From Macrostomum lignano (taxonomy: Eukaryota), in the NCBI GenBank assembly GCA_002269645.1, contig NIVC01001256.1:248001-312000 (forward strand): a DNA stretch of 64,000 nucleotides, written 5' to 3'. Shown one piece after another: positions 1-61,301 of the stretch (positions are counted from its first letter, which is position 1; every line of letters starts with the position of its first letter). The notes beneath the pieces are model-generated. The model had not been told where the DNA came from, made no database searches, and worked only from the letters and a program-made list of their open reading frames with translations. The translations under genes were made by a program, and so were the position numbers.

Positions 1-387
1 AGCACAGCGAGAAACGAACTGCCACCACCGGTCACTCAAGCTCTCTGTCCCCTTCTGCAAGCGCTCCCCCCTTGACCCCTGGGCCGCCAAGCCGCCCCCA
101 TTCAGTCAGTCGCTTTCTGCGACAAAACCCCGCCGTGTCTGTCCGTCTGTCATCGACAGCGAAGCATCGACTAACAGAAACCAAAGCAATTTTACCATTT
201 ATCTATAGACGAGGGGTTTATCCCCTTAAACTGCACGGCCAGGACTTTCAATACCAACTTCCCGCCGAGTACTTCGGCAAGACAACTGCCGCTTCCAGTG
301 AACAGTTGAGTCGATTTCTCAATAACAGGAAAAATTTGCATTAAATCCTCATTTTCTTCCATTTATCCCAATTATTGATTCCCTTAG

Positions 388-19625: not shown

Positions 19626-19837
19626 GTGAGCTCCCGCCAGTTCCCTTATTTCTTCCTCAAGCTCATAAAACCTCGAAAAGTTTTAGCACTAGTTACCGCA
19701 AAACTATCGAGATTGTTTAATTTCTTTCATTTTATTTTCCTTCAATTTGGTAAGCCTAGACTGAACATAACGGAAGGTCGAAATAACATTTTTAAGCCTC
19801 TCTAGAACCTCACTCGACACCAAAACCGGCATTTCAG

Positions 19838-24000: not shown

Positions 24001-27000
24001 TTCTCTCCCTTTCCTCTTTCCTCTCTTCTCTCCCTTTCCTCTTGACTCTCTTCTCTCCCTTTCCTCTTTCCTCTCTTCTCTCCCTTTCCTCTTGACTCTC
24101 TTCTCTCCCCTTACTCTTGACTCTCTTCTCTCCCTTTCCTCTTGACTCTCTTCTCTCCCTTTCCTCTTTCCTCTCTTCTCTCCCTTTCCTCTTGACTCTC
24201 TTCTCTCCCTTTCCTCTTTCCTCTCTTCTCTCCCTTTCCTCTTGACTCTCTTCTCTCCCCTTACTCTTGACTGTCTTCTCTCCCCTTACTCTTGACTCTC
24301 TTCTCTCCCTTTCCTCTTGACTCTCTTCTCTCCCTTTCCTCTTGACTCTCTTCTCTCCCTTTCCTCTTGACTGTCTTCTCTCCCTTTCCTCTTGACTCTC
24401 TTCTCTCCCTTTCCTCTTGACTGTCTTCTCTCCCCTTACTCTTGACTCTCTTCTCTCCCTTTCCTCTTGACTCTCTTCTCTCCCTTTCCTCTTTCCTCTC
24501 TTCTCTCCCTTTCCTCTTGACTCTCTTCTCTCCCTTTCCTCTTTCCTCTCTTCTCTCCCTTTCCTCTTGACTCTCTTCTCTCCCCTTACTCTTGACTCTC
24601 TTCTCTCCCTTTCCTCTTGACTCTCTTCTCTCCCTTTCCTCTTGACTCTCTTCTCTCCCTTTCCTCTTGACTCTCTTCTCTCCCTTTCCTCTTGACTCTC
24701 TTCTCTCCCCTTACTCTTGACTCTCTTCTCTCCCTTTCCTCTTTCCTCTCTTCTCTCCCTTTCCTCTTGACTCTCTTCTCTCCCTTTCCTCTTTCCTCTC
24801 TTCTCTCCCTTTCCTCTTGACTCTCTTCTCTCCCTTTCCTCTTGACTCTCTTCTCTCCCTTTCCTCTTTCCTCTCTTCTCTCCCTTTCCTCTTGACTCTC
24901 TTCTCTCCCTTTCCTCTTTCCTCTCTTCTCTCCCTTTCCTCTTGACTCTCTTCTCTCCCCTTACTCTTGACTCTCTTCTCTCCCTTTCCTCTTTCCTCTC
25001 TTCTCTCCCTTTCCTCTTGACTCTCTTCTCTCCCTTTCCTCTTTCCTCTCTTCTCTCCCTTTCCTCTTGACTCTCTTCTCTCCCTTACTCTTGACTCTCT
25101 TCTCTCCCTTTCCTCTTTCCTCTCTTCTCTCCCTTTCCTCTTGACTCTCTTCTCTCCCTTTCCTCTTGACTCTCTTCTCTCCCCTTCCTCTTGACTCTCT
25201 TCTCTCCCTTTCCTCTTGACTCTCTTCTCTCCCTTTCCTCTTGACTCTCTTCTCTCCCCTTACTCTTGACTGTCTTCTCTCCCTTTCCTCTTGACTCTCT
25301 TCTCTCCCTTTCCTCTTGACTCTCTTCTCTCCCTTTCCTCTTGACTCTCTTCTCTCCCTTTCCTCTTGACTCTCTTCTCTCCCCTTACTCTTGACTCTCT
25401 TCTCTCCCTTTCCTCTTGACTCTCTTCTCTCCCCTTCCTCTTGACTCTCTTCTCTCCCTTTCCTCTTGACTGTCTTCTCTCCCTTTCCTCTTGACTGTCT
25501 TCTCTCCCTTTCCTCTTGACTGTCTTCTCTCCCTTTCCTCTTGACTCTCTTCTCTCCCTTTCCTCTTGACTCTCTTCTCTCCCTTTCCTCTTGACTCTCT
25601 TCTCTCCCTTTCCTCTTGACTCTCTTCTCTCCCTTTCCTCTTGACTCTCTTCTCTCCCTTTCCTCTTGACTCTCTTCTCTCCCTTTCCTCTTGACTCTCT
25701 TCTCTCCCTTTCCTCTTGACTCTCTTCTCTCCCTTTCCTCTTGACTCTCTTCTCTCCCCTTACTCTTGACTCTCTTCTCTCCCTTTCCTCTTGACTCTCT
25801 TCTCTCCCTTTCCTCTTGACTCTCTTCTCTCCCTTTCCTCTTTCCTCTCTTCTCTCCCTTTCCTCTTGACTCTCTTCTCTCCCCTTACTCTTGACTCTCT
25901 TCTCTCCCTTTCCTCTTGACTCTCTTCTCTCCCTTTCCTCTTTCCTCTCTTCTCTCCCTTTCCTCTTGACTCTCTTCTCTCCCTTTCCTCTTTCCTCTCT
26001 TCTCTCCCTTTCCTCTTGACTCTCTTCTCTCCCCTTACTCTTGACTGTCTTCTCTCCCCTTACTCTTGACTCTCTTCTCTCCCTTTCCTCTTGACTCTCT
26101 TCTCTCCCTTTCCTCTTGACTCTCTTCTCTCCCTTTCCTCTTGACTGTCTTCTCTCCCTTTCCTCTTGACTCTCTTCTCTCCCTTTCCTCTTGACTGTCT
26201 TCTCTCCCCTTACTCTTGACTCTCTTCTCTCCCTTTCCTCTTGACTCTCTTCTCTCCCTTTCCTCTTTCCTCTCTTCTCTCCCTTTCCTCTTGACTCTCT
26301 TCTCTCCCTTTCCTCTTTCCTCTCTTCTCTCCCTTTCCTCTTGACTCTCTTCTCTCCCCTTACTCTTGACTCTCTTCTCTCCCTTTCCTCTTGACTCTCT
26401 TCTCTCCCTTTCCTCTTGACTCTCTTCTCTCCCTTTCCTCTTGACTCTCTTCTCTCCCTTTCCTCTTGACTCTCTTCTCTCCCTTACTCTTGACTCTCTT
26501 CTCTCCCTTTCCTCTTTCCTCTCTTCTCTCCCTTTCCTCTTGACTCTCTTCTCTCCCTTTCCTCTTTCCTCTCTTCTCTCCCTTTCCTCTTGACTCTCTT
26601 CTCTCCCTTTCCTCTTGACTCTCTTCTCTCCCTTTCCTCTTTCCTCTCTTCTCTCCCTTTCCTCTTGACTCTCTTCTCTCCCTTTCCTCTTTCCTCTCTT
26701 CTCTCCCTTTCCTCTTGACTCTCTTCTCTCCCTTACTCTTGACTCTCTTCTCTCCCTTTCCTCTTTCCTCTCTTCTCTCCCTTTCCTCTTGACTCTCTTC
26801 TCTCCCTTTCCTCTTTCCTCTCTTCTCTCCCTTTCCTCTTGACTCTCTTCTCTCCCTTACTCTTGACTCTCTTCTCTCCCTTTCCTCTTTCCTCTCTTCT
26901 CTCCCTTTCCTCTTGACTCTCTTCTCTCCCTTTCCTCTTGACTCTCTTCTCTCCCCTTACTCTTGACTGTCTTCTCTCCCTTTCCTCTTGACTCTCTTCT

Positions 27001-28290
27001 CTCCCTTTCCTCTTGACTCTCTTCTCTCCCTTTCCTCTTGACTCTCTTCTCTCCCTTTCCTCTTGACTCTCTTCTCTCCCCTTACTCTTGACTCTCTTCT
27101 CTCCCTTTCCTCTTGACTCTCTTCTCTCCCTTTCCTCTTGACTCTCTTCTCTCCCTTTCCTCTTGACTCTCTTCTCTCCCTTTCCTCTTTCCTCTCTTCT
27201 CTCCCTTTCCTCTTGACTCTCTTCTCTCCCCTTACTCTTGACTCTCTTCTCTCCCTTTCCTCTTTCCTCTCTTCTCTTCCCTTTCCTCTTGACTGTCTTC
27301 TCTCCCTTTCCTCTTTACTCTCTTCTCTCCCCTTACTCTTGACTCTCTTCTCTCCCTTTCCTCTTTCCTCTCTTCTCTCCCTTTCCTCTTTCCTCTCTTC
27401 TCTCCCTTTCCTCTTGACTCTCTTCTCTCCCCTTACTCTTGACTCTCTTCTCTCCCTTTCCTCTTTCCTCTCTTCTCTCCCTTTCCTCTTGACTCTCTTC
27501 TCTCCCTTTCCTCTTGACTCTCTTCTCTCCCTTTCCTCTTGACTCTCTTCTCTCCCTTTCCTCTTGACTGTCTTCTCTCCCCTTACTCTTGACTCTCTTC
27601 TCTCCCTTTCCTCTTGACTCTCTTCTCTCCCTTTCCTCTTGACTGTCTTCTCTCCCTTTCCTCTTTACTCTCTTCTCTCCCCTTACTCTTGACTCTCTTC
27701 TCTCCCTTTCCTCTTTACTCTCTTCTCTTCCCTTTCCTCTTGACTGTCTTCTCTCCCTTTCCTCTTTACTCTCTTCTCTCCCCTTACTCTTGACTCTCTT
27801 CTCTCCCTTTCCTCTTTCCTCTCTTCTCTCCCTTTCCTCTTGACTCTCTTCTCTCCCCTTACTCTTGACTCTCTTCTCTCCCTTTCCTCTTTCCTCTCTT
27901 CTTTCCCTTTCCTCTTGACTCTCTTCTCTCCCTTTCCTCTTGACTCTCTTCTCTCCCTTTCCTCTTGACTCTCTTCTCTCCCTTTCCTCTTGACTCTCTT
28001 CTCTCCCTTTCCTCTTGACTCTCTTCTCTCCCTTTCCTCTTGACTCTCTTCTCTCCCTTTCCTCTTGACTCTCTTCTCTCCCTTTCCTCTTGACTCTCTT
28101 CTCTCCCTTTCCTCTTTACTCTCTTCTCTCCCTTTCCTCTTTACTCTCTTCCCTTCCATTTCCTCTTTACTCTCTTCTCTCCCTTTCTTCTTTACTCTCT
28201 TCTCTCCCTTTCCTCTTTACTCTCTTCTCTTCCATTTCCTCTTTACTTTCTTCTCTCCCTTTCTTCTTTACTCTCTTCTCTCCCTTTCCT
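21050..28290. repeat. ~7.2-kb polypyrimidine satellite, 25-bp unit (ctcttctctccctttcctcttgact), ~290 copies, with higher-order duplications
   Basis: Continuous array with recurrent variants (gactgt, ccccttact, ctttcct). It degenerates into CT-rich sequence up to ~28430. Confidence 0.98.
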
Positions 28291-37465: not shown

Positions 37466-38499
37466 GGAGTGGACGGAGATGCATTGAAGATGGAGGTAGA
37501 AATCGACATCTCTTAAAGATAGAGGTGGAATAAAAGTTGTGGAGCAAGAAATCAATCGGAAAAGAAGGAGATGAAGAAGGGGATCTGTGTCAATTATTGC
37601 ATTTAATTAACCAAAAAATAGTTTATGACTACTAAATAATTTCAGCTTTAGTGCAACAATGTTCCATGAGACTGCCAATCTTTTCATCACCTAGGAATTG
37701 AATTTCATTTCCCTCTCCACCCATACCTCCGCCCTGGAGTGTGCAGCTATATTCCATGTTGCACTTTTCAGTGTTTTTTTTCTCCCAACGCCCCGGGTTT
37801 CGGGGGCCGGGGCGATAAGGACTCAACAAGAGCCACGCCACTCACTGGAGTCCCCCCTTCTGGCTACTCCACAGCCCCTGTCGCTCCTCAATTCACAGAC
37901 TTCGGTCACTCGCCACAGTTTCATGGCTGAATAATTGTGGCTGAGAGGACCGGCTTCGGCGAGTGTGAATGGGGAGAGGGGGGAGAGAGTGGAGATCTGA
38001 CAGGCGGACAGCAACAGTCTCGAAGAGGAACAGCGGCAGCCCCGCGGTGAGTCATCGGCAACTCCAGTCGGCAGAGACAACTGAGCAAACTCTGCAAAAG
38101 GTCCGACAGGCCAAGCAGCTGCGGCCCGAGCCTCTCAGAGCCACTTTTGTCAGGGTGCTGAGTAGTGCTGCCGGGGCAGAGGGGAGCGAGAGACAGTGCG
38201 GCCGTCAAATCTGTCTGGGCACCTTTAGACTTTCTTTGGAGGGCCGCGGGGAGGTGTCGGAGGGTTCAAGCAGCAGCGTGTCCTGAGCCGGAGAGGTCAA
38301 TTGTGCAGGGTCCGGGTTAGACTTCGTTTTTCTTGGGTTTTTTGAAATTTAAACTATTTTTAAATTTTATGCCAGGTAGTTTCAGTTGGGATAAGGCTAA
38401 ATAATCACCAGCGACTCAAACAGTTTGCGAGTTCTGACGGCGAGAGTCGTGATGAAACTTTGGACTCCGTTTGAGGAGCAGTTTTCATGGTGGGCTGCT

Positions 38500-38990
38500 T
38501 GTGGTGGTTGTACGTGGGGGTTGTTCGTGGAGGTTGTTCGTGGGGGCTGTTTGTAGGGGCTGTTGGAGGGGGTTGTTAGTGTGGGGCTGTTGTTAGGGGT
38601 TGTTAGTGGGGGATGTTGGTGGAGGCTGTTTGTGTGGCGCTGTTGGTAGGGGCTGTTGGAGGGGTTGTTAGTGGGGGCCTGTTGGTAGGGGGCTGTTGGA
38701 GGGGGTTGTTAGTGGGGCTGTTGGAGGGGGGCTATTGGAGGTGGTTGTTAGTGGGTGTTAGTGGGGGGCTGTTGGAGGGGGTTGTTAGTGGGGCCTGTTG
38801 GTAGGGGGCTGTTGGAGGGGGTTGTAAGTGGGGGCTGTTGGAGAACTTGGAAGGGGTTGTTAGTGGGGGCCTGTTGTTGGGGGCTGTTGGTAGGGGGCTG
38901 TTGGAGGGGGTTGCTAGTGGGGGGCTGTTGGTAGGGGTTGTTGGAGGGGGTTGTTAGTGGGCGGCTGTTGGGGGGGGGGGGGCTGTTGGC
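38500..38990. repeat. degenerate G/T-rich repeat with many G-runs
   Basis: ggggctgttggagggggttgttagt-like units. Confidence 0.8.
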
Positions 38991-39409
38991 GAAGCTTTAC
39001 TCTTTATCACCAATAATTCGACATATGTACGACTCGTAATTAAAAAACTCGAGAACACGAGCAAATCGCTTAATTGTAGCAGCGAAATAATTTTATGCAC
39101 TGAGCAAATTCATCAGCATTAGAAGCTGCTCAATCAGGCCCCTGAACTTTTGTTGAACCCCTGAAGTCGAGTGGCATTTACTACTTATTTTAGTAGTATC
39201 TGTAGCTTTAGAATGTTTATTAAATAGCGCAGTAGATGGAACGAATATTTTTCAGAGCAACAACACATTGAGTCACGTGACTTTTTAACTGTCGATTCGC
39301 AATAGTAGTTAAAGAGGACAATAAAAATATCGAATCGATACAACATAGAGGTGAGTTTGCATGTCCACTCATTGTACAATTTCCGCGCGAGTGCAAAGAA
39401 TCGTGCAAG

Positions 39410-40551
39410 TCAAACGTCCGTAGAGTTGACGGCCCGTTCCGGCTCGGACTTGATGGAGCTGCCCAGACTCGCCAGTCGGGTCGGCCGATCGGCCGCCAAG
39501 TCGCTCCCGGCACCGTTGCTCACAGCCGACTCGCTGAACTGCCGGATTAGCGGCGCTTTTGATCTGTGCTCTTCCTGCCGCTCCGCCTGCTGCTCCTCCT
39601 GCCGCTCCGCCTGCCGCTCCGCCTGCTGCTCCGCCTGCTGCTCCGCCTGCTGCTCCGCCTGCTGCTCCTCCTGCCGCTCCGCCTGCTGCTCCGCCTGCTG
39701 CTCCTCCTGCCGCTCCGCCTGCTGCTCCGCCTGCTGCTCCGCCTGCTGCTCCGCCTGCTGCTCCGCCTGCTGCTCCGCCTGCTGCTCTGCCTGCTGCTCC
39801 GCCCGCTGCCTCTTAGCATATTTATTTGGCTCCTTTGTCGAGGACGCCAGCCGACCAGACGAGATGACGCTGACGGTGGCAGCTGTGGCGGCAGTGACGG
39901 CAGTAGCGGCGGCGGCATCCTTCCCGTTGACGCCGACAGTTGTTGGGTTGAACGCGGTGGCGGCAGCGGAGGCCGGATGCAGCAGGTGCTGGCTGGCTGC
40001 GGCAGACGGCAGCACCTGCAGGTTGACTCCACCAGCAGAAGTCACTGCGTAGGTTGGCAGACGGCGCAGGCTGATGGCGTCCAGAGTCTGCTGCTGCTGC
40101 TGCGGGTGCCAGCGGAGCCAGTGCAGCGGCCGCAGCCCGCACCGGTCGCCATTGGGCGGCTCTTCGGATTCTTCAACTGCCGTCGTCGTTGCCACCGCGC
40201 TCGCCTGCTCGTCGATGGCCTCGAGGGCGCGCTCCTCGGCGAAGCGGCGCTGCAGGCAGGCGAGTCGTGCTTGGCGCTCCTCCAGGCAGATGGACATCCG
40301 AGAGCCTCGCGCGTACTCCCTGTAGATCACAGTGCCGCTGGACTCAGCGCACACCTGCACTTTGTCCAGATTCTTCGGACGCAGGTGCCGGGCTCTGTCG
40401 GATCGGCTGCCGCGCGACAGGCGCAGGCTGCCCAGCTTGTGCAGGAAGACGGCCACCGCGGCGGCCCAGGCGCCCAGCACCAGCAGGAAGATGAGCGCGT
40501 CGGACACCGTCCAGCGGGGCGGGGAGTACTTGGCCGGAGCGGCGGTCGGGG
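39410..40551 (-). CDS. FNDC4/5: terminal exon of FNDC4/FNDC5-like protein: juxtamembrane, TM helix and long cytoplasmic tail
   Basis: caaccacag|CC CCG acceptor (phase 1). TM SDALIFLLVLGAWAAAVAVFLHKLG parallels FNDC5 GEVLIIVVVLFMWAGVIALFCRQ (recalled). Followed by RPKNLDKVQV...VIYREY, then a low-complexity tail ending at the stop at 39410. Confidence 0.8.
39578..39812 (-). repeat. coding 12-nt repeat encoding (EQQA/ERQA/ERQE)n in the FNDC-like tail
   Basis: In frame within the 39410-40551 exon, ~19 units. Confidence 0.85.
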
Positions 40552-41691
40552 CTGTGGTTGTAAATATGATTTTTTATGCATGTTTAAATATGTTGAAACT
40601 TCAGTTTTTATCATTTAGCGAAAATTCTATCAAAAACACTTTAAAGCTACTATCAGTAGTCTGCTTTGAATGAGTGGGTGAGCGGGTAAAACGGGGATCA
40701 GTTATTGAGCAACGCAGGCACACGAAATTCCCGAACACAGGCTAAATTTCTGTTGCGCACCTTCCCAAGCAAGAATCAAGCCGCCAGCCCTCCGGACCGT
40801 CGAGATATTCAACGATTCTGCCATAAGCGCTAGCGTATTCAATGCACCCTGTATTCTAAATTTCATCAGCACGTTGACCACGTGTCGGCATCAGATCTGA
40901 CTTCGTTGGTCACCGGCCTTCACCCAGGCGGAGCTTCTGGACCTTCAACAGATGGCACCAGGTGACTATGGACACCCTATTGCATTCCGCCACCCCCTTG
41001 GTGTACTGCTAATGATTGCGCAATCCAGCTGCTGCAGCCTCTGAGCACGGATTTAGCTTCCCTCGCTTACCGAACCACCTGATCTCAGCTCGTAATGGAC
41101 AATCTCTAATGGACTCATAAAGCTACTCTCCTTTCTTCCTGGGATTAATTTTTTTCCAGGCTGGCAGTCACAATCCGGCCACGCCCAAAAGCTTCAGCCA
41201 CGCCCATTGGGCCGGCCATTTATAGGCCTGTCCGAGCCTGTCCGGTGTCTGGCCGGTTTCCCATCTCATTATTTTTCTCTCTATGCCTCCAGGCAGCCCG
41301 GGCCGGCTGGGAGGTTGGGGCTGAACGCCATGCGAACCGGATTTACACGCGCGGGCTCTTGCCGGCAGAGGAAATTAACTGATGTTTTCTACTTTAATCC
41401 AGTCAAAAAGCTGAGTAGCAATATGAGCTGATTGACTATTCATGCGAGCCCAGATCCCAGTCTCCCCGGCCTAACTGCCATCGAGCAGCTCGGATGAGGC
41501 CTGTCGCCTCCCCCCCCCAGCCTCCGCAGTGGGAAGCCGATGAAGCCCAACAGATGTCGGTCGACAGTCGGCATGCAACTCAAAGGATCGATTTCCGCCT
41601 TCTTCTCTGCATTTTTTACACCTCCATTGCTTCTTGGGCCAAAATTGTTGCTTTTTGCCTCGCTATTGCCGGTGCCTCTGATGACTGTGCT

Positions 41692-43146
41692 CACTGCCAT
41701 CTGTCTCCACTGCCATCTGTCTCCACTGCCATCTGTCTCCACTGCCATCTGTCTCCACTGCCATCTGTCTCCACTGCCATCTGTCTCCACTGCCATCTGT
41801 CTCCACTGCCATCTGTCTCCACTGCCATCTGTCTCCACTGCCATCTGTCTCCACTGCCATCTGTCTCCACTGCCATCTGTCTCCACTGCCATCTGTCTCC
41901 ACTGCCATCTGTCTCCACTGCCATCTGTCTCCACTGCCATCTGTCTCCACTGCCATCTGTCTCCACTGCCATCTGTCTCCACTGCCATCTGTCTCCACTG
42001 CCATCTGTCTCCACTGCCATCTGTCTCCACTGCCATCTGTCTCCACTGCCATCTGTCTCCACTGCCATCTGTCTCCACTGCCATCTGTCTCCACTGCCAT
42101 CTGTCTCCACTGCCATCTGTCTCCACTGCCATCTGTCTCCACTGCCATCTGTCTCCACTGCCATCTGTCTCCACTGCCATCTGTCTCCACTGCCATCTGT
42201 CTCCACTGCCATCTGTCTCCACTGCCATCTGTCTCCACTGCCATCTGTCTCCACTGCCATCTGTCTCCACTGCCATCTGTCTCCACTGCCATCTGTCTCC
42301 ACTGCCATCTGTCTCCACTGCCATCTGTCTCCACTGCCATCTGTCTCCACTGCCATCTGTCTCCACTGCCATCTGTCTCCACTGCCATCTGTCTCCACTG
42401 CCATCTGTCTCCACTGCCATCTGTCTCCACTGCCATCTGTCTCCACTGCCATCTGTCTCCACTGCCATCTGTCTCCACTGCCATCTGTCTCCACTGCCAT
42501 CTGTCTCCACTGCCATCTGTCTCCACTGCCATCTGTCTCCACTGCCATCTGTCTCCACTGCCATCTGTCTCCACTGCCATCTGTCTCCACTGCCATCTGT
42601 CTCCACTGCCATCTGTCTCCACTGCCATCTGTCTCCACTGCCATCTGTCTCCACTGCCATCTGTCTCCACTGCCATCTGTCTCCACTGCCATCTGTCTCC
42701 ACTGCCATCTGTCTCCACTGCCATCTGTCTCCACTGCCATCTGTCTCCACTGCCATCTGTCTCCACTGCCATCTGTCTCCACTGCCATCTGTCTCCACTG
42801 CCATCTGTCTCCACTGCCATCTGTCTCCACTGCCATCTGTCTCCACTGCCATCTGTCTCCACTGCCATCTGTCTCCACTGCCATCTGTCTCCACTGCCAT
42901 CTGTCTCCACTGCCATCTGTCTCCACTGCCATCTGTCTCCACTGCCATCTGTCTCCACTGCCATCTGTCTCCACTGCCATCTGTCTCCACTGCCATCTGT
43001 CTCCACTGCCATCTGTCTCCACTGCCATCTGTCTCCACTGCCATCTGTCTCCACTGCCATCTGTCTCCACTGCCATCTGTCTCCACTGCCATCTGTCTCC
43101 ACTGCCATCTGTCTCCACTGCCATCTGTCTCCACTGCCATCTGTCT
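41692..43146. repeat. perfect 16-bp minisatellite (ctgtctccactgccat), ~91 copies, intronic
   Basis: No variant unit seen over ~1455 bp. It starts 33 nt from the donor at 43179 and produces five spurious 480-650-aa ORFs. Confidence 0.98.
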
Positions 43147-43179
43147 ATCGCCAGCCCCCAAAAGTGCATTTGTGCTCAC

Positions 43180-43632
43180 TGGAGTTCGCACCGGTCAGGT
43201 TTGCCTTGGCCGCCATGTCCTCAGCAGCGACAGCGGCGCTGAGATTCCAGACGCTGAAGACCAGCGACTCCGGCCAGCGGCAGAAGAGGCCCGACGGCTC
43301 CTGAAGCACAGAGACGGAGGCCCGGTAGACCACTTCCGGTCGGAGGTGGTCCACGCGGTGCCCGCTGGCCGAGCAGCTGAGATGCCAGACGCCGCGGAAG
43401 CTGAGGCGGCCAGCCGGCGGCCCAGTCGAATCGAACAGTCGCAGCTCGAGCTCGCGGCAGAAGCGCCGCGCTGGCGGAGGCAGCGGCTGCCACTGGAGTA
43501 ACGCGGCGGATCCCGGGGCTGGCGCGGCCCGGACTCGAAGCTTCAGCCGGTGCCGGCAAGTCTGGGACGGGACAGCGAACTCAGGCTCAGGCTTGGCCTC
43601 CGCTGCCGTGTCTGCAGCTGCTAGCGGCACAA
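43180..43632 (-). CDS. FNDC4/5: FN3-domain exon of FNDC4/FNDC5-like protein
   Basis: cctggcag|TT GTG ... TCC A|gtgagc, 453 nt, phase 1 to phase 1 (alternative donor after 43192). FN3 hallmarks AALLQW and DHLRPEVVYRASV. Post-FN3 PESLVFS...AEDMAAKAN resembles FNDC5 SEPVLFKT...AEKMASKN. Sequons NLS and NLT. Confidence 0.8.
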
Positions 43633-44744
43633 CTGCCAGGGGTGATGAAGATAACGGAGGGGATGGGGGAAGCTGCAGAGAAGCTCTGTGTGAGTCTCAT
43701 TGGTCAGGCGTTGACTGGCTCTCTGACTAGTTCAGCTGATGAAGCTGAGAATCTGAGAAGCAGATTTAAATAGAATAATTTAGAGCTGAAAATGCTACAG
43801 TAAAGAAATTGATAACTACATTTGAGTTCCTTTGTAAACTTCACTAATGATTTACATTTCATTACTTTTGGATAAAATAATTAGTTTGAATTTTTTCAGG
43901 TACAAGTCAGAAAAGCATCGCGAGCTGAAAGCAAAAGGAAGCAGACCCAGGCGTACATTGCTGTGAGATATCAGGGTCAGTACACATCAGCCAGACTGAT
44001 TCGCGCAACCGCTATTGTCTACTGTTAGTAAACTATACGGAAAAAGAAATGCTAGAAATACTTTGAAATTTGCAACGACTGCTGCGAGTATGCCACTAAC
44101 TAGGCCTAAATTAATCAATCAATATACTCATTCATCAGTTCACTCAAAGACTCAGATATTACCTTATGACTTCACTCATATCCTCACTCATGAACTCGCT
44201 CATAAACTCACTTATGAACTCACCCATGAACTCACCCGAAGTGCTGTAATCTTGTACCTATAAAATATTTTTATACAGCATTAAAAAGTTTATCAACAGT
44301 TCAACATCCGGTTGCTCTGCCCCCTATGCGTCGCATTCTCTCCTCCCGTATTATGACCGGGAATCAATCTGACTGTGAGCTGAGTGCCTGAGTACCCCCC
44401 CCCCTCTGAATTGCGGGGCGCGAGCCGACTGCTTCTATTGATTGCAGCCCGGACCGGGAGCTGAGTGAGCTGAGTAGTGTGGGATTTGGGAAGCAACGAG
44501 AGGCAGAACTGAGATGAGGGATTGGAGATTGCGGATGCTGAATGCCTGCGGATGCAGATGATGCACAAAGACAAATCTCGCTACTCAAGCAGTGTTTTGT
44601 GCGTTTCGGCGGCTTCTCACAATTCAGTTCCGCCTGAATCCCGTGCTGGCTTGCCCTGAGGCGGATTTGCCTTCCCTTCACCTTAGTTCACGGCTTCATC
44701 AGCTGCCATGCTGGGGCACCGCGATGGAGCTTCTGACAGTGTGG

Positions 44745-45560
44745 CTGTGCTTGTGTGTCTGTGTCTGTGTGTCTGTGTTTGTGTGTTTGTGTTTGTGTGT
44801 CTGTGTTTGTGTGTCTGTGTTTGTGTGTCTGTGTTTGTGTGGCTGTGTTTGTGTGTCTGTGTTTGTGTGTCTGTGTTTGTGTGGCTGTGTCTGTGTGTCT
44901 GTGTGTCTGTGTCTGTGTGTCTGTGCTTGTGTGTCTGTGTCTGTGTGTCTGTGTTTGTGTGTCAGTGTGTGTGTGTCTGTGTGTCTGTGTCTGTGTGTCT
45001 GTGTGTCTGTGTTTGTGTGTCTGTGTTTGTGTGTCTGTGTCTGTGTGTCTGTGTCTGTGTGTCTGTGCTTGTGTGTCTGTGTTTGTGTGTCTGTGTCTGT
45101 GTGTCTGTGTCTGTGTGCTGTGTGTTTGTGTGTCTGTATGTCTGCGACTGTGTAACTGTGTGGCTGTGACTGTGTAACTGTGTGACTGTGACTGTGTAAC
45201 TGTGTGACTGTGACTGTGTAACTGTGTGACTGTGTGTCTGTGTGCCTGTGTGTTTGTGTGACTGTGTGTTTGGTCTGTGTCTGTGTGTCTGTGTCTGTGT
45301 GCTGTGTGTTTGTGTGTCTGTATGTCTGCGACTGTGTAACTGTGTGGCTGTGACTGTGTAACTGTATGACTGTGTGTCTGTGTGCCTGTGTGTTTGTGTG
45401 ACTGTGTGTTTGTGTCTGTGTGCCTGTGCAATTTTGTGCCTGTGCAATTTTGTGCCTGTGTGTCTGTGTGCCTGTGTGTCTGTGTGCCTGTGTGTCTGTG
45501 TGCCTGTGTGTCTGTGTGCCTGTGTGTCTGTGTGCCTGTGTGTCTGTGTGCCTGTGTGTA
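44745..45560. repeat. composite TG-rich micro/minisatellite (tgtgtctg, tgtgactg, tgtgcctg blocks), intronic
   Basis: Successive blocks with changing units in intron 1 of the FNDC-like gene. Confidence 0.93.
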
Positions 45561-45693
45561 TACGTGTCTTTGTTTTTGTCTTTATGGCTGTCTCATCGCA
45601 GGTCTTCTATCACCTTTTTTACGCTCAGAAAATGCGTGTGAAGGAAGTCATTTATCACTGAATTTTGGTTGGTATGCACAACAAGCAACTCAC

Positions 45694-45736
45694 CAAGCAG
45701 AGCCAGGCAGCCGATGGGTAGCCAGATGCTCGGCAT
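45694..45736 (-). CDS. FNDC4/5: first coding exon (signal peptide) of FNDC4/FNDC5-like protein
   Basis: ATG CCG AGC...CTT G|gtgagt. Splicing to 43632 gives MPSIWLPIGCLALLVVPLAAA-DTAAE, a textbook signal peptide. An in-frame upstream ATG at 45781 is an alternative start. Confidence 0.72.
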
Positions 45737-46182: not shown

Positions 46183-48118
<1,936 letters not shown>

Positions 48119-54073: not shown

Positions 54074-55005
54074 GTTCTGCAGTCTCGCTCGTAGAGTGTC
54101 ATAAAAAGCGCAGGTGCGTCCCGACTAACATGCAGTAGCTTGACACTTAGCGTGTGTGCGCTCTCATTTTTAGTGGAGTTAAGAGCTGTTGCAGCCTGCC
54201 CTGGGGGGAATTCAGAGGGAGAAGGGAAGGGGAGAGGTGAGGAGAGGCATTAGGAGGAAGCAGCTGCGTCAAACAGCAGTTTAGCTGTGGGGACTCAACA
54301 TTTCGCCTGGGGGATTCTGTTCTTGTCCTTGATCTGTCTGCCGCGCGGTGATTCGTGAGCTGTCAAAGGAAGTCCGTTGAGTCGAACTGGCCTGGCTGAT
54401 AGCGATATAGATCTATAATTAATTTGCCTCTCAGCACAGGACAGGCAGCCAGTAAGGCTTTACTAGAAAATAAAATCCCTCAAACGAAAGCCAAGTGCCG
54501 CTGGAATACTCAGTCACGTGCGAATAGGGAAGCTGAGATTCAGCTCCCGCCAAATCGTCTTGATCAAATTGCCTACTCGAATTTCGTCGAAACGAGGACT
54601 GTATTAATCTGGGGGTTCGGAGCTTTGGGATTTGTCTTGCCCATTCTTCTATCCGACAGGAATACTGATGGCCGCTCCCTCTCTTGGCCCCCATTGCTGC
54701 GGCCCGCGATGTAGAGACCTCATCGATGATGCTATCAGAGAGGCAGCTAGCGAGGGCTCACGTGAGCACAAATAGTAATTTTACCCGCGAGTGCCATCAA
54801 ACACTGTTTAGTGTGCCTGACTGCTGGAATCCAGCTGAGTCCCCTCGCGCTACATTGCTCAAAGACATCGGATACTCGAATGCGGATTAGCGTACTCAGC
54901 TCAGAGAGGCTGCTTCCCGAACAACTGACAAAAGTTACATCGGGTCTGTGTTGCAGAGAAAAAATACATTTAGACAGAAACATATCGAAGAAGCGCCCTC
55001 GTTAG

Positions 55006-55938
55006 GGTTGTCAGAGAGGGAGTTGTCAGAGAGAGGGTTGTCAGAGAGGGAGTTGTCAGAGAGAGGGTTGTCAGAGAGGGAGTTGTCAGAGAGAGGGTTG
55101 TCAGAGAGGGAGTTGTCAGAGAGAGGGTTGTCAGAGAGGGAGTTGTCAGAGAGAGGGTTGTCAGAGAGGGACTTGTCAGAGAGGAAGTTGTCAGAGAGAG
55201 GGTTGTCAGAGAGGGACTTGTCAGATAGGGAGTTGTCAGAGAGAGGGTTGTCAGAGAGGGAATTGTCAGAGAGGGAGCTGTCAGAGGGAGTTCTCAGAGA
55301 GGGAGTTGTCAGAGAGGGAGTCGTCAGAGAGAGAGAGGGAGTTGTCAGAGAGGAAATTGTCAGAGATGGGACTTTTCCGATAGGGAGTTGTCAGATAGGG
55401 AGTTGTCAGAGAGGAAGTTGTCAGAGATGGGACTTTTCCGATAGGGAGTTGTCAGATAGGGAGTTGTCAGAGAGGGAGTTGTCAGATAGGGAGTTGTCAC
55501 AGAGGGAGTTGTCAGAGAGGGAGTTGTCAGATAGGGAGTTGTCACAGAGGGAGTTGTCAGAGAGGGAGTTGTCACAGAGGGAGTTGTCAGAGAGGGATTT
55601 GTCTGAGAGGGATTTGTCAGAGAGGGAGTTGTCAGATAGGGAGTTGTCAGATAGGGAGTTGTCACAGAGGGAGTTGTCAGAGAGGGATTTGTCTGAGAGG
55701 GATTTGTCAGAGAGGGAGCTGTCAAAGGGAGTTGTCAGAGAGGAGGGAGTTGTCAGAGAGAGGGTTGTCAGAGAGGGAGCTGTCAGAGAGGGAGTTGTCA
55801 GAGAGGGAGCTGTCAGAGAGGGAGTTGTCAGAGAGGGAGCTGTCAGAGAGGGATTTGTCAGAGAGGGAGCTGTCAGAGATATTTGTCAGAGAGGGATTTG
55901 TCAGAGAGGGAGCTGTCAGAGGGAGTTGTCAGAGAGGG
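55006..55938. repeat. 15-bp minisatellite (gtcagagagggagtt), ~62 copies, intronic
   Basis: Ends ~52 nt before the acceptor at 55990. It produces the ERELS pseudo-ORF. Confidence 0.96.
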
Positions 55939-55990
55939 TTACCCTAGTTGACCTCAGCTCACCGCCCCAGGCCGGCCCAACCGATTCCAG

Positions 55991-57522
55991 GCGTGGCCAT
56001 CATCTCAAACGTGTTCTCCCTGGTTGCCATGGCGATTCTACGCGCCAGGAGTTTCCGCCGTCAGGAGCCGGTGAAGCAGCGGCTCTGGCAGGGCCGGCGA
56101 CTCGTCCTGCTGCTTCTGCTGGTGTGGGGCGGCGCTGCCGCTCTCGCCTCGCCGAACATCTTCATCCGGTCCACCGTGACCTTCGGCGTGCAGAGCATGC
56201 AGGAGTTCATGCAGGGCCGCAACCGCGGCGGCGGCGGTGAGGCTCTCAACGCTACTGGCAGTCCCAGCGACGCGCCCGAAGACCAGCAGTGCGGCGAAAT
56301 CTGCGTCACATTCTGCGACGAGTACTGGGGTGAAAACCCGTGGGCGAGGCGGCTGTACTCCGTGCTGCTGCTGCTGCTGGTATTCTGCATGCCCTGCGCC
56401 GTCATCTCAGCTTGCTACTGCTTCATCACCGCTAGCATCGCGGCGCTGGCCCGCCTGCTCAGCCAGTCGGAGCAGCAGCCTGACGGTGAGGAGCTTCAGC
56501 TGTGGCGGCTGCAGCGGCATCAGCAGCGTCCACCGACGCCCCAGCATCCGGCGCCGCCGAGTCCGAATCTGCTTCATCCAAACAGGTGTCTCATGCTCAA
56601 CCTGAGCCAGCATCAGCACCAGCGTCATCGTCAATCTTTGCAGTTCTCCAGCAGCGCTCCGGTCAGCCCGACAACTGGCGGTGGCGGTGGAAGCGACGCC
56701 GTCGGTCCCAGCAGCCCCGTGGGTGCGGAGGGCCCTGGCGGCGGCAACGTAGGCGGGCTCAGCCGCTTCCACAGCCACGACCGCTTGAACCCGTGCGTAT
56801 CCTCCTACACGGACCAGATCCAGGCGAGCGAGTCTCACAGCAGCGTGCCCTCTCAGTACCAGGCCAGCGTCGCGCACCAGTCCACGAAGCGCGCCGTGCA
56901 GACGCTGGTGCTCCTTGTCGCCTGCTTCGTTATCTGCTGGCTGCCGGTGAATCTCGTCGGAGTCTGGATCGACTTCTCCTCTGCTGGCGGCGGTCACCAG
57001 CGCCGCGATCCGAGGCCGCCGTTCCGGGGCGGGCTGCAGCTGGTGGCCGGGCGGCCGGAGGTCATGCGACCGCTGGAGGAGAGCATCTACAGCGTGGCGC
57101 TATTTCTCGGCCACCTGCACAGCGCGGTGTCGCCTATTTGCTACTGGTGCCTCAACAAGAGCTTTCGGCGCCACCTGAGCGCCCTGGCCTCGCGCATGTG
57201 CTGCCGGGTATTCAGGCGGTCCGGCAATCGGCAGGACGAGCAGCGCCGAGGAAGAGGCGGCGGCGCTGGAGTCGGCGGAGGCGGCGGAGCTCGTGGGGGC
57301 AGAGGAGACGCTTGCGGCGGCGGCGGAGGCGGCGGAGGCGGCGGCGGCAGGGCGGAGGGAGCCTGCGCAGTTCCGCTCGTGATCCCTGACGACGCGCCGG
57401 ACGGACGAACCACAGCGGCGGTGGCGGCCGCTGTTGCCGCCGGCGGGTACATCGGCAGCCGGTCCTCGGACACGGAGTCGGCCAGAGTTCTCGCTGGAAA
57501 ATTGCGCCTGATTGGCCTGTGA
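55991..57522 (+). CDS. class A (rhodopsin-like) peptide-type GPCR terminal exon: TM3-TM7, long ICL3 and C-tail
   Basis: gattccag|GC GTG joins in phase 1. TM4 LVWGGAAALASP, ECL2 CGEICVTFCDEYW, TM5 FCMPCAVISACY, TM6 KRAVQTLVLLVACFVICWLP, TM7/H8 LGHLHSAVSPICYWCLNKSFRR. About 618 aa from the ATG at 51761. Confidence 0.9.
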
Positions 57523-60162: not shown

Positions 60163-61301
60163 TTTGCGTCACGCGAGTATGTTTTTATCCAAAGTAGTTT
60201 GTGTAGAAGAAGTGCATCATATTCTCAGCGCATCTGCAATGATATGCATGACTGAGGCACAGGCCTTCCCTTTATTAATATGAAGCCCCAGATCATTTAC
60301 ATCAGAGATGTAAAAGTGATCGCGAACTGATTGAGACTTGCATGTAGGCTGGATGTTGGAGCAAGTACGAAATGCATTAGGAGAGGCTGAGGTCTGCGCT
60401 TCAGATGGGATCGAACGATGCAGAGTCTCAAAACCAGATTGATTAGTTCTGACCAGTAGCCATTTTGTTCCTAACGGAATTCAATCTGTTAGGATACACC
60501 TCAACCTGCAGCTGAGTACAGAAGCTTGTCCGCGCCAACAGCCAGACATTTGGGGCGTGGCTGGAGAGGCCGGCCGGCCATTCGCGAGTTTCAACTGCGC
60601 GTAGGTGGGCAAAAATAGCCGAGCAGATTCGATGGGAGTGGCTCACATGGAATGAGACTGAATAAATTCGGCTGCTGAACAGCAGACAGTGGCCCTGAAA
60701 ACTGACATAAATCGGCGAATAGGGGGTAAACCATAATTAATGATCAAAGGCACATAATCAAGGAATGACCTGAAGGAACTAACTGAATGATCAGAGGAAA
60801 CTGTGCTCAACAACAAAACAACTAGAAACTATTACTGTAGTTTCGCGGAAGCAGAATGGCCCACCTGATATTTCCTGCGCAGTGCACCGCCGGTCCGACA
60901 GGGAGAAAGTGGCCAAACTGTGCGCTTTTGGCTCTGATCGAATCGCCAATTAGGGAAGCGCAATTAGCGGCGCGACAGCAGGAGAGTCTTTATGGGGAAT
61001 AGCAGGGGCGGTTCCGCAGCGCAAAGCAGCTTCCTTTGCAGCTTCGCTTACTGCCGCGATTTAAAAATAGGCTCTGTGTACTGACGCCATGTAGTTTTGG
61101 AAAAGCGCTCGAGTAAAAGATCTGGGGGCAATCTAACAGACAGGTTGCTCTTCTCAAAGAGAATCTGAGCACAAAAGTTGTCGTCCTTGGTCTGTCCAGG
61201 GGTCTCAGGCTTCACCTGAACAAATAGGCACTCTATAGGCCAAGGCGTCCAAAATAGCAAAAAAATTTTGCTTGTTGCGATTTTAGTTCAACGCAAAGAA
61301 A

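What the first reader, a model, noticed from the sequence alone, without database searches (positions are those of the whole stretch)
39410..45736. Hidden three-exon FNDC4/FNDC5 (irisin precursor)-like gene
Seen: three phase-1-compatible exons (45736-45694, 43632-43180, 40551-39410) assemble a 545-aa protein with a signal peptide, a single FN3 domain, a short stalk with N-glycosylation sequons, a TM helix and a cytoplasmic tail. The ORF track shows only disconnected fragments buried among repeat ORFs. Established (recalled, not searched): FNDC4/5 have the same SP-FN3-TM layout, with a TM motif VLxMWAGVIALF and a post-FN3 AEKMASKN segment, matched here by VLGAWAAAVAVF and AEDMAAKAN; their ectodomain is shed as irisin. 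Inference: an invertebrate, probably flatworm, member of this family with an unusually long ~350-aa tail, informative for the origin of irisin-type signalling.
Basis: partly seen in the sequence, partly recalled or inferred. Interest (0 to 1): 0.7.

Follow-up and report, generated by a model that had tools for sequence, protein, structure and literature searches.

The report
Divergent flatworm FNDC5-like membrane protein gene
A real three-exon gene hidden among repeats encodes a single-pass membrane protein that is a divergent, probably flatworm, member of the family that includes the vertebrate irisin precursor FNDC5; its outer domain has diverged so far that nothing supports an irisin-like hormone role.

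Summary
Minus-strand exons 45736-45694, 43632-43180 and 40551-39410 join through GT/AG sites, both introns in phase 1, into an open 545-aa frame with an N-terminal hydrophobic segment, an ectodomain, a TM helix and a long tail. Homologous genes in Tubulanus, Lingula and Capitella have the same three coding exons, the same phases, and intron 2 within two residues of the same position.

The family assignment is partly right. The TM helix and about 60 following residues belong to Pfam DUF4808. A profile of the window plus its one close relative (Macrostomum lignano A0A1I8JKZ5, 55% identical) retrieved 55 further proteins; all 55 match DUF4808 and six also match fn3. Recalled human FNDC5 and FNDC4 share the TM signature (30.7 and 28.7 bits; unrelated TM helices score 7.3 or less).

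The ectodomain gets no Pfam fn3 hit and no database homolog, and barely beats shuffles against the relatives' FN3. Only an alignment-guided AlphaFold model (pLDDT 66.6) gives a generic FN3 fold, and irisin is not among the top 50 matches. The closest relatives are uncharacterised invertebrate proteins with a cytoplasmic motif I did not see in the recalled FNDC4/5 sequences. It is a new member of a known kind, of modest interest. Shedding or irisin-type signalling is untested.

The parts
45694..45736 (-). Coding exon 1 (43 nt): start codon and most of the signal-peptide-like hydrophobic segment (MPSIWLPIGCLALL + 1 nt). An alternative in-frame ATG at 45781 would make it 88 nt.
   Evidence: Sequence and donor G|GTGAGT; assembly; best of 136 phase-1 candidates in the 12 kb upstream.
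43633..45693 (-). Intron 1 (2061 nt, phase 1). It contains a GT-rich 8/14-nt tandem array at 44739-45559.
   Evidence: GT..AG boundaries; TRF; 40% GC with no codon periodicity.
43180..43632 (-). Coding exon 2 (453 nt, symmetric phase 1-1): end of the signal peptide, the whole ectodomain and the stalk (residues 15-166).
   Evidence: Open frame, splice sites; coding GC3 signature and codon log-likelihood. It occupies the same position as the single FN3 exon of the Tubulanus, Lingula and Capitella homologs.
43250..43540 (-). FN3-like beta-sandwich core (model residues 46-142). W62, L99, L111, Y117 and F140 align with residues invariant in the relatives' FN3 domains.
   Evidence: MAFFT alignment A7; AF2 with A7: seven strands, pLDDT 60-86 over the core; Foldseek top 50 all FN3, TM-score normalised to target 0.75-0.8. 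Sequence support is weak.
43187..43240 (-). Predicted stalk helix (residues 146-163, AAVAAEDMAAKANLTGAN). Sequons N144 and N164 flank it and N159 lies within it.
   Evidence: AF2 helix 131-148 in exon-2 numbering, block-mean pLDDT 56-57, i.e. low confidence; sequons.
40552..43179 (-). Intron 2 (2628 nt, phase 1). It contains a perfect 16-nt x 90.9 tandem array at 41692-43146.
   Evidence: GT..AG boundaries; TRF.
39410..40551 (-). Coding exon 3 (1142 nt including the stop): rest of the stalk, TM helix, conserved juxtamembrane module, long low-complexity tail and conserved C-terminal motif.
   Evidence: ORF; 55% identity to M. lignano P0001 over residues 177-340; profile search.
40439..40498 (-). 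Transmembrane helix (residues 184-203, ALIFLLVLGAWAAAVAVFLH) with the family-invariant W194 and F201.
   Evidence: Hydropathy; TM profile score 42.0 bits vs 7.3 or less for unrelated TM helices; conserved columns.
40247..40516 (-). DUF4808-type module (residues 178-267): RW motif, TM helix and the cytoplasmic motif RPKNLDKVQVC...TVIYREY...EERQARL.
   Evidence: hhalign vs spiralian profile E 7.8e-14 and 3.9e-13; 55 of 55 relatives hit PF16066; 15 of 28 family-conserved columns kept. The window alone scores only 14-15 bits vs cut-off 27.
39574..39809 (-). In-frame 12-nt microsatellite encoding (AEQQ)n in the cytoplasmic tail. It is absent from P0001.
   Evidence: TRF 12 nt x 19.7, 92% matches; translation; P0001 sequence.
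39467..39559 (-). Conserved C-terminal motif (residues 497-527, KAPLIRQFSESAVS...PTRLAS), shared with P0001. It shows that the frame stays coding through the repeat.
   Evidence: BLASTP of the two tails, 35% identity, E 3e-4.
39216..39221 (-). AATAAA, a candidate polyadenylation signal 188 nt after the stop codon.
   Evidence: Pattern scan; function inferred.

Best explanation
This is an intact but unannotated gene with three coding exons, from a flatworm (a Macrostomum or a relative). It encodes a type I single-pass membrane protein of 545 aa, or 560 aa from the upstream ATG. The parts are a signal peptide, one very divergent FN3-like beta-sandwich, a short glycosylated helical stalk, a TM helix with the DUF4808 signature (W194...F201), a conserved cytoplasmic juxtamembrane motif (PKNLD / VIY..Y / E.R..RL), and a roughly 280-residue low-complexity tail inflated by an in-frame (AEQQ)n microsatellite and ending in a conserved motif.

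The protein belongs to the bilaterian DUF4808 family. Vertebrate FNDC4/5 represent a short-tailed branch of that family. The uncharacterised SP-FN3-TM-DUF4808 proteins of nemerteans, annelids, brachiopods and oysters represent the branch closest to this gene.

Shown: the gene structure, the homology of the TM and juxtamembrane module, and conserved intron positions and phases.

Inferred: conservation is concentrated in the TM helix and the cytoplasmic motif, while the ectodomain has drifted beyond sequence recognition. The conserved job of the protein is therefore most likely done at the membrane, with the TM helix and juxtamembrane motif engaging a membrane or cytoplasmic partner. The FN3-like domain would be a fast-evolving surface module. 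Ectodomain shedding is possible but has no support here.
For: Gene model:
- Canonical splice sites, phase 1-1 and an open 1638-nt frame.
- A coding signature in exon 2 that matches exon 3.
- Exon 1 is the best candidate in the 12 kb upstream.
- The homologs have the same structure: Tubulanus 88/324/476 nt, Lingula 211/291/338 nt, Capitella 37/372/521 nt, all phase 1-1. Their intron 2 lies 25-26 residues before the invariant TM Trp; in the window it lies 27 residues before.
- L005 and L006 also show a phase-1 acceptor just before the TM exon.

Family:
- P0001 from M. lignano is 55% identical over residues 177-340 and shares a C-terminal motif.
- The exhaustive profile search found 56 hits, including P0001 itself, all over the TM helix and juxtamembrane region. 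All 55 others hit DUF4808 (best E 8e-18) and six also hit fn3.
- hhalign of the model against six full-length spiralian members gave probability 97.9% and E 3.9e-13.
- The TM profile gave 42.0 bits for the window, 30.7 and 28.7 for recalled FNDC5 and FNDC4, 7.3 or less for controls and 11.8 or less for shuffles.
- Recalled FNDC5 hits fn3 plus DUF4808 at 30.2 bits, above the cut-off, and aligns collinearly with the spiralian profile (E 1.6e-14).

Fold:
- The AF2 model with a 7-sequence alignment has seven strands and pLDDT 66.6.
- The Foldseek top 50 are all FN3 domains.
- Total identity to the relatives' FN3 exceeds all 300 shuffles.
Against: - No transcript evidence: the junctions are predicted, not observed.
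- The window alone is below the Pfam DUF4808 gathering score and has no fn3 hit.
- Sequence support for FN3 in exon 2 is weak: hhalign E 0.28, 11 of 1000 shuffles reach its HMM score, and 27 of 300 shuffles reach its invariant-residue count.
- The FN3 model was guided by an alignment of FN3 relatives, so it is not independent. The single-sequence model was uninformative (pLDDT 43).
- The family-invariant W of the 'KW' motif is L205 here and in P0001, and only 15 of 28 conserved columns are kept.
- The membrane-proximal mechanism is inferred from the conservation pattern alone. No function is known for the DUF4808 cytoplasmic motif.
Confidence: 0.8

Rival explanations
1. Irisin-type precursor. 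The protein is a true FNDC4/5 ortholog whose main role is to release its FN3 ectodomain as a soluble signalling factor.
For: The SP-FN3-TM architecture is the same, and the TM signature is shared with FNDC5 and FNDC4. A stalk of about 40 residues with three sequons lies between the fold and the membrane and could hold a cleavage site. A Drosophila homolog, Iditarod, has exercise-related functions (PMC10523451).
Against: The ectodomain is the least conserved part. It has no homolog at E<=1 and no fn3 hit. Irisin is not among the top 50 structural matches. Even the M. lignano relative is recognisable only from the TM helix onward. The cytoplasmic motif that defines the nearest relatives was not seen in the recalled FNDC4/5 sequences. 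Against the spiralian profile, the FN3 of recalled FNDC4 scores no better than a tenascin FN3 control. Orthology was not tested by a tree, and shedding cannot be tested in silico.
Confidence: 0.15
2. The gene really consists of exon 3 alone, or exon 3 with different upstream exons. It would be a DUF4808 protein with a short ectodomain and no FN3, as Drosophila CG12541 is described, and exons 1-2 would be a chance ORF in GC-rich DNA.
For: P0001 and most database relatives are annotated starting just before the TM helix. CG12541 is reported to carry the FNDC5-like domain without a beta-sheet fold (PMC10523451). GC-rich repeat DNA here produces many long spurious ORFs.
Against: Exon 3 has no start codon before the TM helix other than a GTG inside the stalk, and it begins at a strong polypyrimidine-AG acceptor in phase 1. 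That is exactly where the FN3-bearing homologs have their phase-1 intron. Exon 2 is a symmetric 1-1 exon with a frame-specific coding signature. It aligns in register with strands B, C, E and F of the relatives. The short relatives examined are ORF-level calls that also sit behind a phase-1 acceptor.
Confidence: 0.04
3. A decaying pseudogene or a copy under relaxed constraint. The divergent ectodomain, the microsatellite-inflated tail and the repeat-filled introns would reflect loss of function.
For: Extreme ectodomain divergence. The otherwise invariant KW tryptophan is replaced. The tail holds an (AEQQ)n expansion and an intron holds a perfect 1.45-kb minisatellite.
Against: There are no stops or frameshifts in 1638 nt and all splice sites are intact. 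GC3 periodicity is strong in all exons. The KW-to-KL change and the Cys substitutions are shared with P0001, so they are lineage features and not decay. The C-terminal motif is still conserved in frame beyond the repeat.
Confidence: 0.03

Closest known systems
Uncharacterised spiralian SP-FN3-TM-DUF4808 proteins (Tubulanus polymorphus XP_074655229.1, Capitella teleta ELT89998.1, Lingula anatina XP_013385249.1, Crassostrea virginica XP_022342893, Lineus longissimus XP_064642794.1)
   Same: They have three coding exons with both introns in phase 1, and intron 2 at the same place before the TM helix. The architecture is the same. The TM helix and the cytoplasmic PKNLD/VIY..Y/R..RL motif are homologous (hhalign E 3.9e-13).
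   Different: Their ectodomains are recognisable fn3 (29-34 bits); the window's is not. Their exon 2 ends right after strand G, whereas the window's carries about 25 extra stalk residues. Their tails are shorter in most cases. They keep the invariant KW and the SN.S sequon, both of which the window lacks.
Macrostomum lignano A0A1I8JKZ5 (P0001; named 'C-X-C motif chemokine 2' in UniRef)
   Same: It is the closest relative: 55% identity over residues 177-340, shared lineage-specific substitutions (KL, Cys233, Cys254), and a shared C-terminal motif.
   Different: It is annotated from the TM exon only (263 aa), with no ectodomain and no (AEQQ)n repeat. At 55% identity it is a paralog, or an ortholog from another species, and not the same gene. 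Its locus could not be fetched.
Vertebrate FNDC5 (irisin precursor) and FNDC4
   Same: The SP, single FN3, stalk and TM layout is the same. The specific TM signature (E/D-x-hydrophobic...W-A...F) is shared, scoring 30.7 and 28.7 bits against the family TM profile. FNDC5 passes the Pfam DUF4808 threshold.
   Different: Direct similarity to the window is confined to 27 TM residues (30% identity, pairwise E 0.003). In the recalled sequences, FNDC4/5 have short tails (about 40-50 aa) without the PKNLD/VIY motif, and they match only positions 2-44 of the 121-position DUF4808 profile. From my own knowledge and not tested here: their FN3 is highly conserved and split over two exons. Irisin is not a top structural match to the window model.
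Drosophila Iditarod (FNDC5 homolog) and CG12541 (PMC10523451)
   Same: Iditarod has a single irisin-like FN3, a TM helix and an intracellular domain in an invertebrate. CG12541 is described as carrying an FNDC5-like domain. Several unnamed hits have no FN3 annotated, but whether any is arthropod or CG12541-like is not known.
   Different: Neither sequence was available here, so placement of the window relative to Iditarod or CG12541 was not tested. CG12541 is reported to lack the beta-sandwich, whereas the window has an exon in the FN3 position.

Membership tests
Pfam DUF4808 (PF16066) | The protein scores at or above the curated gathering threshold (27 bits). | tested here: not met
   Window 14.2-15.0 bits, P0001 19.3 bits, both on profile positions 6-43.
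Pfam DUF4808 (PF16066) | A profile built from the protein retrieves family members specifically. | tested here: met
   The window+P0001 profile found 56 hits (including P0001 itself) in 1.84 billion proteins. All 55 others hit PF16066, best E 8e-18.
Pfam DUF4808 (PF16066) | Conserved TM and juxtamembrane residues (W, A, F in the helix; KW; R; PKNL; SVIY..Y; R..R). | tested here: met
   15 of 28 columns conserved at 75% or more are kept, including W194, F201, R209, P224-K-N-L, V240-I-Y, Y245, R258 and R261. The KW Trp is replaced by L205.
Spiralian SP-FN3-TM-DUF4808 proteins | Three coding exons (SP | FN3 | stalk-TM-tail) with both introns in phase 1. | tested here: met
   Window 43/453/1142 nt. 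Tubulanus 88/324/476, Lingula 211/291/338, Capitella 37/372/521. All are phase 1-1.
Spiralian SP-FN3-TM-DUF4808 proteins | Intron 2 at a fixed distance before the invariant TM tryptophan. | tested here: met
   27 residues in the window against 26, 26 and 25 in the relatives.
Spiralian SP-FN3-TM-DUF4808 proteins | Ectodomain recognisably homologous to the family's FN3. | tested here: inconclusive
   hhalign E 0.28. HMM score 1.0 bit, reached by 11 of 1000 shuffles. Total identity exceeds 300 of 300 shuffles, but the invariant-residue count does not (27 of 300). The alignment is in register, with W62, L99, L111, Y117 and F140 matched.
FNDC4/FNDC5 | N-terminal signal peptide. | tested here: inconclusive
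   A hydrophobic core at residues 3-20 is followed by AAAD. No signal-peptide predictor was available.
FNDC4/FNDC5 | A single FN3 domain detectable with the fn3 profile. | tested here: not met
   No PF00041 hit at E<=10 for the model or for exon 2. Recalled FNDC5 and FNDC4 score 50.7 and 47.5 bits.
FNDC4/FNDC5 | FN3 fold of the ectodomain. | tested here: inconclusive
   The alignment-guided AF2 model has seven strands and pLDDT 66.6. The Foldseek top 50 are all FN3. The model depends on an alignment of FN3 relatives, and the single-sequence model failed.
FNDC4/FNDC5 | Specific structural resemblance to irisin rather than to generic FN3. | tested here: not met
   No irisin entry appears among the 50 best PDB matches. 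Monobodies, fibronectin and EpoR lead the list.
FNDC4/FNDC5 | The family TM signature. | tested here: met
   BLASTP of window 183-209 against FNDC5 154-180 gives E 0.003. The TM profile gives 42.0 bits (window), 30.7 and 28.7 (FNDC5, FNDC4), 7.3 or less for eight unrelated TM helices and 11.8 or less for 2000 shuffles. The FNDC5 and FNDC4 sequences were recalled from memory.
FNDC4/FNDC5 | A short cytoplasmic tail of the FNDC4/5 type. | tested here: not met
   The window tail is 342 residues and carries the invertebrate PKNLD/VIY motif. Recalled FNDC5 matches DUF4808 only at positions 2-44.
FNDC4/FNDC5 | Orthology shown by a phylogeny including Iditarod, CG12541 and other single-FN3 TM proteins. 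| not tested
   Sequences of Iditarod, CG12541 and curated vertebrate FNDC4/5 could not be fetched, and the only shared alignable region is about 35 residues.
FNDC4/FNDC5 | Proteolytic release of the ectodomain. | not testable with these tools
   This needs expression and a shedding assay.

The most novel reading that the evidence does not exclude
The flatworm and spiralian proteins would preserve the ancestral bilaterian form of the FNDC5 family: one gene with three coding exons and phase 1-1 introns, combining an FN3 ectodomain with a TM helix and a conserved cytoplasmic PKNLD/VIY motif. Vertebrate FNDC4/5 would then have kept the FN3 and the TM helix but lost the cytoplasmic motif. Arthropod CG12541-type proteins would have kept the TM helix and the motif but lost the FN3. 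Macrostomid flatworms would be letting the FN3 drift. If so, the original conserved function is a cell-autonomous one carried out at the membrane, and hormone-like irisin shedding is a derived vertebrate feature.
Probability: 0.3. Interest if true: 0.5.

Novelty: new member of a known kind. Interest (0 to 1): 0.3.

Why it matters
In practical terms, the gene is real but appears to be missed by annotation, and its M. lignano relative appears truncated to its last exon and is misnamed as a chemokine. Both are worth correcting in flatworm gene sets.

In biological terms, the gene adds a flatworm member to a little-studied bilaterian family that links vertebrate FNDC4/5 to a set of uncharacterised invertebrate proteins. 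The conservation pattern is also informative. The TM helix and cytoplasmic motif are conserved while the ectodomain is free to drift. That suggests the ancestral function of the FNDC5 family lies at the membrane and not in a secreted irisin-like fragment, which bears on the debate over whether FNDC5 acts mainly as a hormone precursor. The window alone cannot settle this question.

Tried and rejected
- Pfam on the whole model, exon 2 and exon 3: no fn3 hit; DUF4808 only below threshold; the other hits are low-complexity noise from the tail.
- PDB sequence search with residues 1-340: nothing at E<=10.
- Word-indexed homolog search with exon 2: no hit at E<=1.
- Word-indexed search with the 53-sequence family profile: only 20 short, unnamed DUF4808 proteins, with no FN3-bearing or vertebrate members, so it did not test the FNDC4/5 link.
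- Single-sequence AlphaFold of exon 2: pLDDT 43, unusable.
- Look-ups of P0001, the window ORF and P0057 in assemblies: not on record. The M. lignano locus and any transcript could therefore not be examined.
- Contigs of the two next-closest relatives (L005, L006) are too short to reach an ectodomain exon.
- The count of family-invariant FN3 residues kept (6 of 11) is reached by 9% of shuffles, so I do not use it as evidence.
- The FN3-only comparison of FNDC5/4 with the spiralian profile is not clearly better than generic FN3 controls, so I do not count it as family-specific.
- Name look-ups for 20 relatives: only five carry names, all 'uncharacterized' or automatic misnomers.
- Rfam on the whole window: no match.
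- tblastn of the model against the window: no paralog.
- Literature: no paper on FNDC5 in flatworms; DUF4808 is mentioned once in passing.

Full report

Yes. On the minus strand, the segments 45736-45694, 43632-43180 and 40551-39410 join into 1638 nt, which is 545 codons plus a stop, with no internal stop.
- The donors are G|GTGAGT and A|GTGAGC.
- The acceptors follow pyrimidine-rich tracts and end in CAG.
- Both introns are in phase 1, and exon 2 is a symmetric 1-1 exon.
- Hydrophobic segments lie at residues 1-20 and 184-203.
- The 30 residues after the second segment carry a net charge of +7, against +2 before it.
- Sequons N144, N159 and N164 sit between the ectodomain and the helix.

These features fit a type I membrane protein.

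The surrounding DNA is GC-rich and repetitive and produces many spurious ORFs, so I checked that exon 2 is more than chance.
- Its codon-position GC (0.73/0.57/0.79) matches exon 3 (0.71/0.53/0.84). The adjoining intron sequence is 40-50% GC with no periodicity.
- A codon table trained on the homology-validated part of exon 3 scores the proposed frame at 38.4, against 18.4 or less for the other five frames.

The 43-nt exon 1 is the best of 136 phase-1 ATG..GT candidates in the 12 kb upstream. It has the only full-consensus donor and the most hydrophobic peptide. An in-frame ATG at 45781 could extend the N-terminus by 15 residues.

**2. Comparative support for the gene model**

The strongest evidence comes from relatives. 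I mapped three FN3-bearing homologs onto their own genomes.

| Gene | Coding exons (nt) | Intron phases | Intron 2 to invariant TM Trp (residues) |
|---|---|---|---|
| Window | 43 / 453 / 1142 | 1, 1 | 27 |
| Tubulanus polymorphus | 88 / 324 / 476 | 1, 1 | 26 |
| Lingula anatina | 211 / 291 / 338 | 1, 1 | 26 |
| Capitella teleta | 37 / 372 / 521 | 1, 1 | 25 |

In each homolog the middle exon encodes the FN3 domain.

Two further relatives sit on short genomic contigs (L005, L006). Both also show a polypyrimidine-AG acceptor in phase 1 just before the TM exon.

The window's exon 2 therefore occupies exactly the slot of the family's FN3 exon. No transcript data could be reached, so the splicing remains inferred.

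**3. What family is it?**

Pfam finds no fn3 domain in the model, even at E<=10. It gives only a sub-threshold DUF4808 match over the TM helix (14-15 bits against a cut-off of 27).

The word-indexed search found one relative, Macrostomum lignano A0A1I8JKZ5 (P0001).
- It is 55% identical over residues 177-340.
- It shares a C-terminal motif, PL(I/L).RQ(F/L)SESA.S...R(L/M)AS.
- It is annotated from the TM exon only and carries the automatic name 'C-X-C motif chemokine 2'.

An exhaustive HMMER search with the two sequences aligned returned 56 proteins (including P0001 itself) at E<1e-3. All of them match the TM helix plus about 60 residues after it. All 55 others match DUF4808 (best E 8e-18), and six also match fn3.

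The named full-length members are 'uncharacterized' proteins of nemerteans, an annelid, a brachiopod and an oyster, with the layout SP-FN3-TM-DUF4808. The model aligns to a profile of six of them with probability 97.9% and E 3.9e-13.

The window keeps 15 of the 28 columns that are at least 75% conserved in the family. These include W194, F201, R209, PKNL 224-227, VIY 240-242, Y245, R258 and R261. The otherwise invariant Trp of the 'KW' motif is Leu here and in P0001.

**4. Link to FNDC4/5**

- FNDC5 hits fn3 (50.7 bits) and DUF4808 (30.2 bits, above threshold, profile positions 2-44 only). FNDC4 hits fn3 and DUF4808 at 21 bits.
- FNDC5 aligns collinearly with the spiralian profile from the signal peptide through FN3, stalk and TM helix (probability 98.3%, E 1.6e-14).

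I split that comparison into parts to see what drives it.
- The FN3 part is not clearly family-specific. FNDC5 scores 61 and FNDC4 scores 45, while a tenascin FN3 control scores 48 and fibronectin FN10 scores 31.
- The TM part is specific, as the table shows.

| Sequence scored against the 32-column TM profile (51 relatives; window and P0001 excluded) | Bits |
|---|---|
| Window | 42.0 |
| FNDC5 (recalled) | 30.7 |
| FNDC4 (recalled) | 28.7 |
| Eight unrelated single-pass TM helices | 7.3 or less |
| 2000 shuffles | 11.8 or less |

Directly, though, the window and FNDC5 share only 27 residues at 30% identity.

It may be chance.

**5. Is the ectodomain an FN3 domain?**

By sequence this is not established.
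- Exon 2 has no homolog at E<=1.
- hhalign against the relatives gives E 0.28.
- An HMM of the relatives' ectodomains scores exon 2 at 1.0 bit, which 11 of 1000 shuffles reach or beat.
- The count of invariant residues matched (6 of 11) is reached by 9% of shuffles, although total identity exceeds all 300 shuffles.

On the positive side, MAFFT without guidance places exon 2 in register with strands B, C, E and F. W62, L99, L111, Y117 and F140 fall on the family's invariant core positions.

AlphaFold failed with the single sequence (pLDDT 43). With the 7-sequence alignment it gave seven strands plus a stalk helix, with mean pLDDT 66.6 and block means of about 60-86 across the core. Foldseek's 50 best PDB matches are all FN3 domains, with E near 1e-4 and TM-score normalised to the target of 0.75-0.8. 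No irisin entry is among them. Because the alignment consisted of FN3 relatives, this model is supportive but not independent.

My reading is that exon 2 encodes a strongly diverged FN3-like sandwich. It is the positional homolog of the family's FN3 and shows no irisin-specific features.

**6. How it most likely works**

Shown:
- an intact gene for a type I membrane protein;
- a homologous TM and juxtamembrane module;
- conserved gene structure.

Inferred:
- Conservation is concentrated in the TM helix and the cytoplasmic PKNLD/VIY..Y/R..RL motif. Identity there is 55% to P0001 and roughly 20-40% to animals of other phyla.
- The ectodomain is unrecognisable even to the family profile.
- The conserved activity is therefore probably exerted at the membrane through that module, and the ectodomain is a fast-evolving surface domain.

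The Iditarod paper notes that FNDC5 may also act in its intact, unprocessed form, and that Idit acts in autophagy (PMC10523451). That fits a membrane-bound role. Shedding of the ectodomain remains possible, since a stalk with three sequons is present, but nothing here supports it.

The roughly 280-residue distal tail is low-complexity. It contains an in-frame 12-nt microsatellite encoding (AEQQ)n that P0001 lacks. The conserved C-terminal motif beyond the repeat shows that the frame stays coding.

**7. Rivals**

I rate the rivals as follows.
- True irisin-type precursor: about 0.15.
- Exon 3 alone forms the gene, as a CG12541-like protein without FN3: about 0.04.
- Decaying pseudogene: about 0.03.

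The evidence for and against each is in the rival entries.

**8. Novelty and verdict**

The family is known. Pfam DUF4808 exists, FNDC4/5 are well studied, Drosophila Iditarod was published in 2023, and the spiralian members are in RefSeq as uncharacterised proteins.

What is new is modest:
- an apparently unannotated, unusually divergent flatworm member with a long tail;
- the observation that the family shares a three-exon, phase 1-1 structure;
- the observation that its nearest relatives carry a cytoplasmic motif I did not see in the recalled FNDC4/5 sequences.

I file it as a new member of a known kind, with interest 0.3.

The source species was not identified. The neighbouring genes are ordinary metazoan genes: an ephrin-receptor-like cysteine-rich repeat exon and a rhodopsin-family GPCR.

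Noticed in passing
window 41692-43146: A perfect tandem array of a 16-nt unit (CACTGCCATCTGTCTC), 90.9 copies at 100% identity, lies inside intron 2 and starts 34 nt after the exon-2 donor. It creates long spurious ORFs in all frames. An array this uniform suggests very recent expansion or an assembly collapse.
   Followed up: partly
window 46183-48000 and beyond: A (GTCT)n microsatellite of at least 455 copies lies just upstream of the gene.
   Followed up: no
window about 22000-28000: About 6 kb with GC skew and AT skew both near -0.85, meaning one strand is almost pure C/T. It is presumably a giant polypyrimidine simple repeat. I did not examine it.
   Followed up: no
window 18686-19720 (+): This ORF encodes seven Ephrin_rec_like cysteine-rich repeats (E 1e-39), presumably an exon of a large extracellular protein.
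   Followed up: no
window 55948-57522 (+): This ORF matches the rhodopsin-family 7TM receptor profile (7tm_1, E 1e-17, matching profile positions 130-260, the C-terminal half of the profile), so it is a neighbouring GPCR gene.
   Followed up: no
P0001 (UniRef A0A1I8JKZ5, Macrostomum lignano): The public entry is named 'C-X-C motif chemokine 2' but is a DUF4808-type membrane protein. It starts just after the conserved phase-1 intron, so it is probably a truncated model built from the last exon only.
   Followed up: partly
window 45781: An in-frame upstream ATG would add MGQAPEHYRQSPLTG to the N-terminus and make exon 1 88 nt long.
   Followed up: partly
window 39574-39809: A 12-nt microsatellite (19.7 copies, 92% matches) lies in frame within the coding tail and encodes (AEQQ)n with AERQ and EEQQ variants. 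It is absent from the M. lignano relative.
   Followed up: yes
window 38492-38977: A G-rich minisatellite (13/27/40/129-nt periodicities) lies about 430 nt downstream of the stop codon.
   Followed up: no
L005 360-420; L006 900-935: The short DUF4808 proteins from Logan and ENA contigs are ORF-level calls of a last exon. Both contigs show a polypyrimidine-AG acceptor in phase 1 just upstream of the called start, so many 'FN3-less' family members in the databases may simply be truncated.
   Followed up: partly
window 61268-62032 (+) and 54948-56240 (+): These ORFs hit the Cornifin (SPRR) and Decapeptide repeat profiles. They are probably proline-rich low-complexity translations and not genes.
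   Followed up: no
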